64,000 nucleotides of DNA from Saccostrea cucullata. Taxonomy: Eukaryota. The stretch lies in the NCBI RefSeq assembly GCF_032062105.1, contig NW_026932584.1, positions 1 through 64,000 on the forward strand, written 5' to 3'. Shown piece after piece: positions 61,235 to 64,000 of the stretch. The notes under the pieces are model-generated. The model saw nothing but the letters and a program-made list of their open reading frames with translations, did not search any database and was not told the DNA's origin. Made by a program: the position numbers and the translations under genes. Within the stretch, counting starts at the first letter, position 1, and each line of letters begins with the position of its first letter.

Positions 61235-64000
61235 AAAAGATTTTATTTCAATATTGTCTATGTTAAATAAAAGATTTTATGACTATGGAGTATCTATTAT
61301 TTATTGGTAAACGGCAATAAAGAGAATATAAAAGTTTCAAAAAATTCAAAGACTTTCAGGAAATATCCCCTTTCTCTGTTCTACTCTAAAATATTAAAAG
61401 TAATTAAGTTTTAGATTGAAATAATTTTTTAAAATGCATGAAAATTTAAAAGAAAAACTGATATCATTTTTTTAAAATGGTAAATATAAAACATAAATTT
61501 AATTTTAAAAAAATAAAGAAATACCTGTAGTAATAATCATTAGATTTATAACTTTATAGCGGCTGTTATGATTTACATTGTATGTTTTCTAAAGCACAAA
61601 AAGGTATCACTCCTTTTTTTTCTACAGTATTTTTCGTTCCAATTCATCCATCATAAGGAACATTTTAAGAAATGTTTGTAATGAACACATTTCGAAAAAA
61701 TAAAAACCAACTCATCATTTAAATGAAAAAGTGTACCTTTGATATGCAAAAATCACAAGTGAAAACCTTAAAAGCAAACTCTTCATGTAGGACAAACAAT
61801 ATACATAACGCCTTAAAAGAATACCTCAAATATTAAATTTTACAGTTATAATGGATTAATCATTATAACAAATTTCATAGGCCAGGAATGAAGTTCGTGT
61901 CATAGGAATTGCCTGTTATTCTTTTTCAAATTGTTGATAATACCTCCCTGTCACAAAAATATTGTTTGTTTTTACGTTAGAAACCATCTTTAATATCATT
62001 ATTTTATTGTGAAATGTGGACTTTGATGATTATATTTTTAACATAGGATTAAAAAAAAAAAAAAAAAAAACCACACACATCGATCTGTGTAACTTCATCT
62101 CTCAGAGGATTATTATGAAATGTTGAAGTTGTTTTTAAAATAGATTTTCTGTAATATTTTTATGGAAGTTATGAAGAAGAATTCGGATAATATTTACTTG
62201 CTGCGTGTTATTTTCTATTTTGCTTTTGTCCCTTAAAAACACGAAAATATAGATTAAATTAGATCCCTTATTGTCAAGATAAGGTACATGAATAACTGAA
62301 TTCTGCAATTCTCATGTTATGTAACTGTCATTTATCATGTTATGTAACTGTCATTAATCAAATTATTTTTAGGATGTTGAAATTAATGTCTCAGTTTTTG
62401 GAAACCTGTATATATAAAATATATTTTTAACGACAAAAAGGAGGTTCACAAGTAAGTCAAATCACGCAAGCTTAAATACACTGCACTCGTGCCAGTTGTG
62501 TTGATTTTAAAAATATACGTAATGATGGTCTCTATAACAATATAGAAATCAACCAACGTATTAATATTGAATTTATTTTAAAATATTAGCCGTAGAAAAA
62601 TTGAATTTTAGCTCTTGCTTTTTATCTTACACTTTGTTTTCATAAGTTTTATCTATCCATTTTATTTTCCAAAATGCATTTTCCGATTACTTGATTTTTT
62701 CCCTAGGTGCATGGTTAATGCACATATGATGGATTTGTGAAAGAACTTTTAAAAAAATGTAGTTTCTTACGATCTTTGAAAAAAATCGAAAAATTCTTTG
62801 TTCGGTTTGGTTTGTTAATCAACTACCAAATAAGGACATCTGATCCTCAACCAGGAAGGATAAATCCAAAAATTAATATTTAATTAGAAATGCATCAAAA
62901 TGAAGCTTGAAAATGAATTTTTTCATGCAACAATTTTCATTTTATTCATCTATATAAGATTCAAGTTTTTGGAAGTCTTAGAAAAGGACTTATAAAAGGG
63001 AAAAAATTATACCGTTTTAGAGAAAAAAGATTTTCGTTAATCCATCCTTAGATAACAATGCTTATTAGCGTGATATGAAATGAGAAGTGATTTGTGGTGT
63101 CTTGCAATGATAGCAAAAGCCTTTTACACTAAGTATTATAGAATGCATGACGGAAACAGAATACAAAAAATACCAAATAAGTATAAAAATCATGACAGTT
63201 TCTATGAATGCCTGGATACCTACCGTTTTTTTAAACCTAAAATATATTTGTTGATCAATTTGCAATTAGAAAATGTATTGCTGATATTCCAATTTGCTTT
63301 TTCTGCAAAAATGTTGGAGATTTGACAATTTCCCCTATATAGTATGATTAACTTTATCTCTAAAAGGAAATACTGAGGATAAATTTAAATAACTTGTAGA
63401 TTGAGATATACTTTTTTGAGTATTTTTGATTACTAGTACTTAACTGCTAATTTTATAAACCTGATAACCGTAAACAACAGGATCCATTCGTTTAAAACAA
63501 ATATTCAATCAACACTTCTAAATTGATACTTTTGCTATATTTACTTTTTTTTGACATTTTTCAAGTTTGTAAATAGTAAACTATACGTTTCTTCTACATT
63601 AAATGGCCAATAATTCTTGTATACTTGTTCATAAATATTCATGCCCATCCTTTATACATTTAGAACAAATTAGATGTCGATAACGATAACATAGACAATA
63701 TCACGTCAGAATCGTATCGATAGTGATCAAAATCAGTAAATTACGAGAATTACTGGATACCTTATACAAGACTGAGTCCCATATCGAAATCATCGATATC
63801 GACAATTTTTTTCAATATCGTACTGTTAATCACTTTTAATTCGCAAAAACTTTATTTTTGAGTGATTACATGACGTGTATGTGAGTCTGTCTGCTCGCGA
63901 AAATTTTATTCTCGCGTATATATGTATTATGAAGGATTTCATACAACAGAAACCTACGCTTGAGAACATTTTGTATTAGAACTTAAGCAATGTCGATATT
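61235..64000 (+). repeat. Tandem segmental duplication, copy B (runs off the window)
   Basis: Matches copy A minus ~49651-50265, 50645-50855, ~51616-51798, ~52485-53605 and 53854-54659. Confidence 0.97.

What the first reader, a model, noticed from the sequence alone, without database searches (positions are those of the whole stretch)
63421..63450. Transposon excision footprint caught by the duplication: TA[CT...AG]TA became TA-CTAG-TA
Seen: copy A reads gat-TA-[CTGTATAGGGG...806 bp...CCCCTATACAG]-TA-cttaactgc, while copy B reads gat-TA-CTAG-TA-cttaactgc. A never-occupied site would have a single TA. B keeps both TAs plus exactly the first two and last two bases of the element. Known: Tc1/mariner transposases make staggered cuts inside the ends, and Tc1 can leave TACATGTA. 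Inference: the MITE predates the duplication and was excised from B afterwards in the germ line, so a matching transposase was active recently.
Basis: partly seen in the sequence, partly recalled or inferred. Interest (0 to 1): 0.85.

Follow-up and report, generated by a model that had tools for sequence, protein, structure and literature searches.

The report
Transposon excision scar in oyster duplicate
One copy of a duplicated stretch of an oyster genome still holds a small cut-and-paste transposon, and the other copy holds the six-letter scar that such a transposon leaves when it jumps out; this is a clean textbook case of a known process, not a new one.

Summary
Copy A holds an 806-bp, TA-flanked, non-coding inverted-repeat element at 53854-54659. 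Copy B reads TA-CTAG-TA at 63431-63438, at the same TA.

The site lies inside a 669-bp, TTAA-flanked miniature transposon with more than 1,600 candidate copies. 26 of 27 other copies read a single TA, so the empty state is known and B carries six extra letters: a second TA plus the first two and last two letters of the element. All 28 sampled copies of the 806-bp family start CTG and end CAG, and 26 have TA on both sides.

A, B and an older copy C form a real head-to-tail array. A's element is older than the A/B split, so insertion, then duplication, then excision from B is the best order.

'Active recently' is only partly supported. Some family members at different loci are 99% alike, but the excision itself cannot be dated. 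No matching transposase was found, and no reads bridged the site.

Earlier notes of this scan had already reported pervasive TACATGTA scars elsewhere in this genome. Here TACTAGTA is about six-fold over-represented too. The same TA was hit independently at least three more times.

Verdict: a real feature and a new member of a known kind.

The parts
63431..63438 (.). Excision footprint in copy B: TA, CTAG, TA. The empty state is a single TA.
53854..54659 (+). 806-bp non-autonomous inverted-repeat element in copy A. It has 11 perfect terminal nt, arms of 36 nt at 72%, and no ORF above 68 aa. TA duplications lie at 53852-53853 and 54660-54661.
62834..63464 (+). Copy B's member of the 669-bp TTAA-flanked host miniature transposon. 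It is 88% identical to the family consensus and its last 13 nt are missing. The footprint sits at the TA at about consensus position 629-630.
52138..54693 (+). Copy A's member of the same host element, split by two insertions: a 1.12-kb one and the 806-bp element.
52485..53604 (.). A-only 1.12-kb insertion with a TAAA duplication. B shows a clean single TAAA. This is an internal control that shows what a never-occupied site looks like in this pair.
49509..61234 (+). Tandem unit A. Homology to B runs to 59155, and the rest is extra repeat DNA.
61235..64000 (+). Tandem unit B. It continues beyond the window to about 68995 of the contig and is followed by the older unit C.

Best explanation
The TA-CTAG-TA in copy B is the scar of a transposase-made excision of a TA-targeting (Tc1/mariner-type) miniature transposon. 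Copy A still holds that transposon. The inferred order of events is as follows. First, a 669-bp TTAA-flanked miniature transposon landed in the ancestral unit. Second, the 806-bp element inserted into a TA near its right end and duplicated that TA. Third, the roughly 8-12-kb unit was duplicated in tandem, giving A and B, both filled. Fourth, in B a transposase supplied in trans cut the element out. The cuts on the non-transferred strands fell 2 (possibly 3) nt inside the ends, so each flank kept TA plus an overhang from the element. End joining then sealed them as TA-CT + AG-TA. The sequence states of A, B and the paralogous empty sites, and the relative ages, are shown here. The staggered cut, the end-joining repair and the identity of the enzyme are inferred from what is known of Tc1, Tc3 and Sleeping Beauty.
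For: A and B share identical flanks around the same TA. 26 of 27 other host copies read one TA. 28 family copies start CTG and end CAG, and 26 of them have TA on both sides with otherwise unrelated flanks. B shows a clean empty site for the other A-only insertion, so B is not generally ragged. A's element carries 28 of 796 substitutions unique among the 28 copies. The adjacent host DNA has 7 of 618 private to A (Fisher p = 0.005), so the element predates the split. The unit junction recurs at B/C, and C is 76-82% identical, so the array is real. TACTAGTA occurs 21 times in 300,905 nt against 3.3 expected. A second scar, TA-CTCAG-TA, sits at the same TA in an unrelated host copy. The same footprint word was reported for Stowaway elements (PMC1925063).
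Against: No read or independent assembly spans the site. No orthologous locus from another individual or species could be reached. No transposase gene with these termini was found. Against the unit-wide divergence, the age argument is only marginal (p = 0.07). The TA is a repeated target, so the shared position is slightly weaker evidence of shared descent than it first appears.
Confidence: 0.85

Rival explanations
1. The duplication came first. The element then entered A and, separately, B at the same preferred TA, and later left B.
For: The TA is hit repeatedly. There is a CTCAG scar in contig C2427 and a CCGA scar in C11723. A family member lies in the opposite orientation at the homologous TA of a 75%-related element in C10388. 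Two control TAs of the host show no such scar.
Against: This needs one more insertion. Only about 4 events are seen among more than 1,600 host copies, so a second hit on B in particular is about a 0.2% event. A's element looks older than the split.
Confidence: 0.07
2. A and B are the two haplotypes of one locus, wrongly laid in tandem. The scar would then be an allele still segregating against the filled allele.
For: The assembly is 1.17 Gb and keeps haplotigs: identical flanks occur in L004/L010 and L075/L076, and C15262 equals C14733. No separate allelic contig of this region was found.
Against: There are no N in the region. The 63 nt before B's start recur after B's end and lead into the older unit C, so a unit-to-unit junction exists twice. 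Substitution divergence is 4.7%, with four large indels.
Confidence: 0.04
3. The six letters are an ordinary small insertion, a palindrome-driven deletion of the element without a transposase, or an assembly error.
For: The site could not be checked with reads. Inverted repeats can be unstable (discussed in PMC1925063).
Against: The letters equal the element's ends exactly (about 0.003 by chance). There is no microhomology at the implied breakpoints, and only 11 nt of perfect inverted repeat. The direct TACT repeats would give a precise loss, not this word. The same word is six-fold enriched.
Confidence: 0.03

Closest known systems
Tc1 excision footprint of Caenorhabditis elegans (TA-CA-TG-TA)
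   Same: The TA is duplicated on insertion. Two terminal letters of each end are kept between the two TAs after excision, which gives a palindromic octamer (cited in PMC3520976; Tc1/mariner footprints of 2-4 bp in PMC7913693).
   Different: The ends here are CT...AG, not CA...TG. The element is a non-coding 806-bp derivative, and the event is inferred from paralogs rather than seen in a cross.
Stowaway MITE footprints in Triticeae beta-amylase intron 4
   Same: It is a TA-flanked element starting CT. Inferred historical footprints include TACT...AGTA, there is repeated insertion into the same TA, and there is an insertion next to an older footprint (PMC1925063). L054 here has the same word directly beside a family member.
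   Different: That case is in plants and rests on orthologs across species. This one is in an oyster and rests on a tandem duplicate plus hundreds of paralogous empty sites.
Sleeping Beauty / ZB canonical footprints
   Same: The same superfamily logic applies: staggered cuts inside the ends, followed by end joining (PMC7913693).
   Different: A 3-nt stagger usually gives a 7-letter word after overlap of the overhangs. No such word was seen at this TA. The CTCAG scar implies that at least one 3-nt overhang is possible.

Membership tests
Tc1/mariner-mobilised miniature element (Stowaway-like) | TA target-site duplication | tested here: met
   26 of 28 sampled copies have TA on both sides, and 2 have one damaged side
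Tc1/mariner-mobilised miniature element (Stowaway-like) | Terminal inverted repeats conserved across copies | tested here: met
   11 nt perfect, and 36-nt arms at 72%
Tc1/mariner-mobilised miniature element (Stowaway-like) | No transposase coding capacity | tested here: met
   The longest ORF is 68 aa
Tc1/mariner-mobilised miniature element (Stowaway-like) | A DDE transposase gene with matching termini in the same genome | tested here: inconclusive
   There are more than 1,183 DDE_3 and 234 mariner-type candidates, many with open frames of 340-360 aa. Searches of DNA in hand and of metagenome contigs found none.
Transposon excision footprint | The unoccupied state of the site is a single copy of the target | tested here: met
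   26 of 27 paralogous host copies read a single TA
Transposon excision footprint | A homologous site still holds the element between duplicated targets | tested here: met
   Copy A
Transposon excision footprint | The extra letters are the element's own terminal letters | tested here: met
   CT and AG
Transposon excision footprint | Confirmed in raw reads and at the orthologous locus of other individuals | not testable with these tools
   The runs found are under 1x and no contig bridges the site. Exact-protein look-ups found nothing.

The most novel reading that the evidence does not exclude
The TA near the right end of the 669-bp TTAA element may be a true preferred landing site for CT...AG elements, with repeated cycles of entry and exit, and the family may still be mobile in living oysters. 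That would give a natural, active Tc1/mariner miniature-element system in a mollusc, with a countable record of about 70,000 TACTAGTA scars.
Probability: 0.2. Interest if true: 0.5.

Novelty: new member of a known kind. Interest (0 to 1): 0.3.

Why it matters
The site gives a fully resolved example of a scar in one genome: donor kept, scar present, and the empty state known from many paralogs. It ties the abundant TA-palindrome-TA words of this oyster genome to a named element family. It shows that the CT...AG family was cut out in the germ line after a datable duplication. It also offers a practical handle for finding the transposase and for using scars to count past excisions. It does not reveal a new mechanism.

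Tried and rejected
1. Reads. One search for runs and one laying gave only repeat unitigs from runs under 1x, and nothing at the site.
2. Independent assemblies. Exact look-ups of two small ORFs beside the B site were not on record.
3. Autonomous partner.
I did not try to read their ends by another route.
   - A terminal-word variant pattern gave 25 single hits and no pairs.
   - No inverted pair of the terminal word encloses a gene in the roughly 330 kb in hand.
   - A metagenome scan gave 21 chance hits. The one apparent pair was unrelated DNA.
4. Presence/absence between haplotigs.
   - The L044 locus is filled and identical on both contigs.
   - The flank of L036 is a 173-bp satellite, so that test said nothing.
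5. A paper search for the terminal word found only unrelated primers.
6. Rfam found nothing in 49000-64000.
7. Copy C cannot serve as an outgroup, because it lacks the host element altogether.
I redid it from the files.

Full report
**The two sites**

I read both sites. Copy A has TA at 53852-53853, an 806-bp element at 53854-54659, and TA at 54660-54661. The element begins CTGTATAGGGG and ends with the reverse complement of that word. Copy B has the eight letters TA-CTAG-TA at 63431-63438 between the same flanks.

**The duplication**

A self-comparison of the window, extended by 10 kb of the same contig, shows three units.
- Unit A runs from 49509 to about 59155.
- Unit B runs from 61235 to about 68995. 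A and B differ at 4.7% of 5,768 aligned sites and by several large indels.
- A third unit, C, starts near 69063-69287 and is 76-82% identical to A.

The 63 nt that precede B's start recur directly after B's end and lead into C. The unit-to-unit junction therefore exists twice. This is a real head-to-tail array and not two haplotypes laid side by side, although this assembly does keep haplotigs elsewhere.

**The empty state of the site**

The key result is that the site lies inside another mobile element. This host is a 669-bp miniature transposon flanked by TTAA, with more than 1,600 candidate copies in the 1.17-Gb assembly.
- In 27 other copies, 26 read a single TA at the homologous position. 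The unoccupied state is therefore known without an outgroup.
- B carries six extra letters: a second TA, then the first two and last two letters of the element that sits in A. The chance of those four letters is about 0.003.
- The pair holds an internal control. A also carries a 1.12-kb insertion at 52485-53604 with a TAAA duplication, and for that one B shows a clean single TAAA. So B looks like a never-occupied site where that is the history, and like a scar where it is not.

**The element family**

The 806-bp element belongs to a family with more than 870 candidate copies.
- In 28 sampled copies of 800-878 bp, the ends are always CTG...CAG.
- 26 copies have TA on both sides, and the DNA beyond the TA is unrelated from copy to copy.
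- Target preference beyond TA is weak.
- The longest ORF is 68 aa.
- The inverted repeat is 11 nt perfect and 36 nt at 72%.

These are the marks of a non-autonomous element moved by a Tc1/mariner-type transposase.

**Order of events**

- Within the host element, A and B share 40 differences from the family consensus. A has 7 private differences and B has 4, out of 618 sites.
- A's 806-bp element has 28 of 796 substitutions that no other sampled copy shows. That is more than the 7 of 618 in the adjoining DNA (p = 0.005). It is only marginally more than half of the unit-wide A/B divergence (p = 0.07).
- With the shared position, this favours insertion before duplication and excision from B afterwards.
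- Copy C lacks the host element and cannot serve as an outgroup.

**Mechanism**

This part is inferred from established knowledge of Tc1, Tc3 and Sleeping Beauty. The transposase cuts the transferred strands at the element boundary and the other strands a few nucleotides inside it. Each flank therefore keeps TA plus a short overhang made of element letters, and end joining seals the gap.
- Two retained letters per side give TA-CT-AG-TA, the counterpart of Tc1's TA-CA-TG-TA (PMC3520976; PMC7913693).
- A second scar at the same TA in an unrelated host copy reads TA-CTCAG-TA. A 3-nt stagger with some trimming therefore cannot be excluded.

**The TA is a repeated target**

- A genome-wide pattern search at this TA found the B scar, the CTCAG scar and a CCGA scar.
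- Only A is filled among true host copies.
- In contig C10388, a family member lies in the opposite orientation at the homologous TA of a 75%-related element.
- Two control TAs of the host, searched at the same stringency, gave no such scar.

This keeps a small rival alive: separate entry into B after the duplication. That rival needs an extra event that is seen in only about 0.2% of host copies.

**How common such scars are**

- In 300,905 nt in hand, TACTAGTA occurs 21 times against 3.3 expected.
- TACATGTA occurs 97 times against 14.6, TACCGGTA 11 against 1.5, and TAGGCCTA 8 against 1.6.
- The other twelve words of this form lie between 0.65 and 3 times expectation.
- The sample is biased towards transposon-rich loci, so the extrapolation to about 70,000 TACTAGTA scars is rough.
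- Earlier notes of this scan, on other windows of the same oyster genome, reported the TACATGTA and TACCGGTA excess. My count agrees and adds the CT...AG word.
- Other scars turned up in passing. One is TA-CAGTG-TA in one host copy. Another is a TACATGTA scar shared by A's own subfamily of the 806-bp element.

**Was the transposase active recently?**

The scar alone says only 'after the A/B split'. Some family members at different loci are 98.8-99% alike and carry 0.2-0.4% unique changes. That is younger than the split, so a source of transposase outlived the duplication. I could not name it.
- The genome holds more than 1,183 DDE_3 candidates and 234 mariner-type candidates, many with open frames.
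- The indirect searches failed.
- Reads could not be used.
- Neither of two haplotig tests found a polymorphic site.

**Comparison with what is known**

The closest precedent is the Stowaway element of Triticeae. It also starts CT, has inferred footprints that include TACT...AGTA, inserts repeatedly at one TA, and shows an insertion beside an older footprint (PMC1925063).

The present case is the same phenomenon in an oyster, documented by a tandem duplicate and many paralogous empty sites. It is a real feature and a well-resolved new member of a known kind, of modest interest.

Noticed in passing
window 62834-63464; consensus from L004-L030: The host repeat is a 669-bp TTAA-flanked miniature transposon. 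It has inverted ends of about 17 nt and more than 1,600 candidate copies, mostly 91-98% identical to their consensus.
   Followed up: partly
L011/L066 (C2427:66550-66579), L062 (C11723:219378-219406), L042/L077 (C10388 about 38890): The same TA of the host family carries two further scar-like insertions, CTCAG and CCGA. In a 75%-related element it carries a full family member in the opposite orientation. Two control TAs show none.
   Followed up: partly
window 53943-53964 and L032-L034: A TACATGTA scar lies inside the 806-bp element and is shared by A's subfamily, while other copies read a plain TA. A has a further 10-bp duplication of it.
   Followed up: partly
L013 (C1169), host consensus position 414: TA-CAGTG-TA stands where other copies read one TA. 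It looks like the scar of a different Tc1-like family with CAG...CTG ends.
   Followed up: no
L054 (C11968 about 3990-4000): TACTAGTA lies directly to the left of a family member whose other TA is damaged. This may be a re-insertion beside an older scar.
   Followed up: no
window 52485-53604: An A-only 1.12-kb insertion has a TAAA duplication, internal repeats of about 146 bp (52658-53370) and a GACGCC-rich tail. Its class was not determined.
   Followed up: no
window + loci, 300,905 nt: Four TA-palindrome-TA octamers, with cores CATG, CTAG, CCGG and GGCC, are 5-7 times over-represented. The window alone holds 9 TACTAGTA.
   Followed up: partly
L036 (C11757), positions 996-1500 and 2315-3670: A family member is inserted in a 173-bp satellite-like tandem repeat that has more than 5,000 candidate matches in the genome.
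   Followed up: no
L004/L010, L075/L076, C14733/C15262: Pairs of contigs have identical flanks, so the 1.17-Gb assembly keeps both haplotypes at many loci.
   Followed up: no
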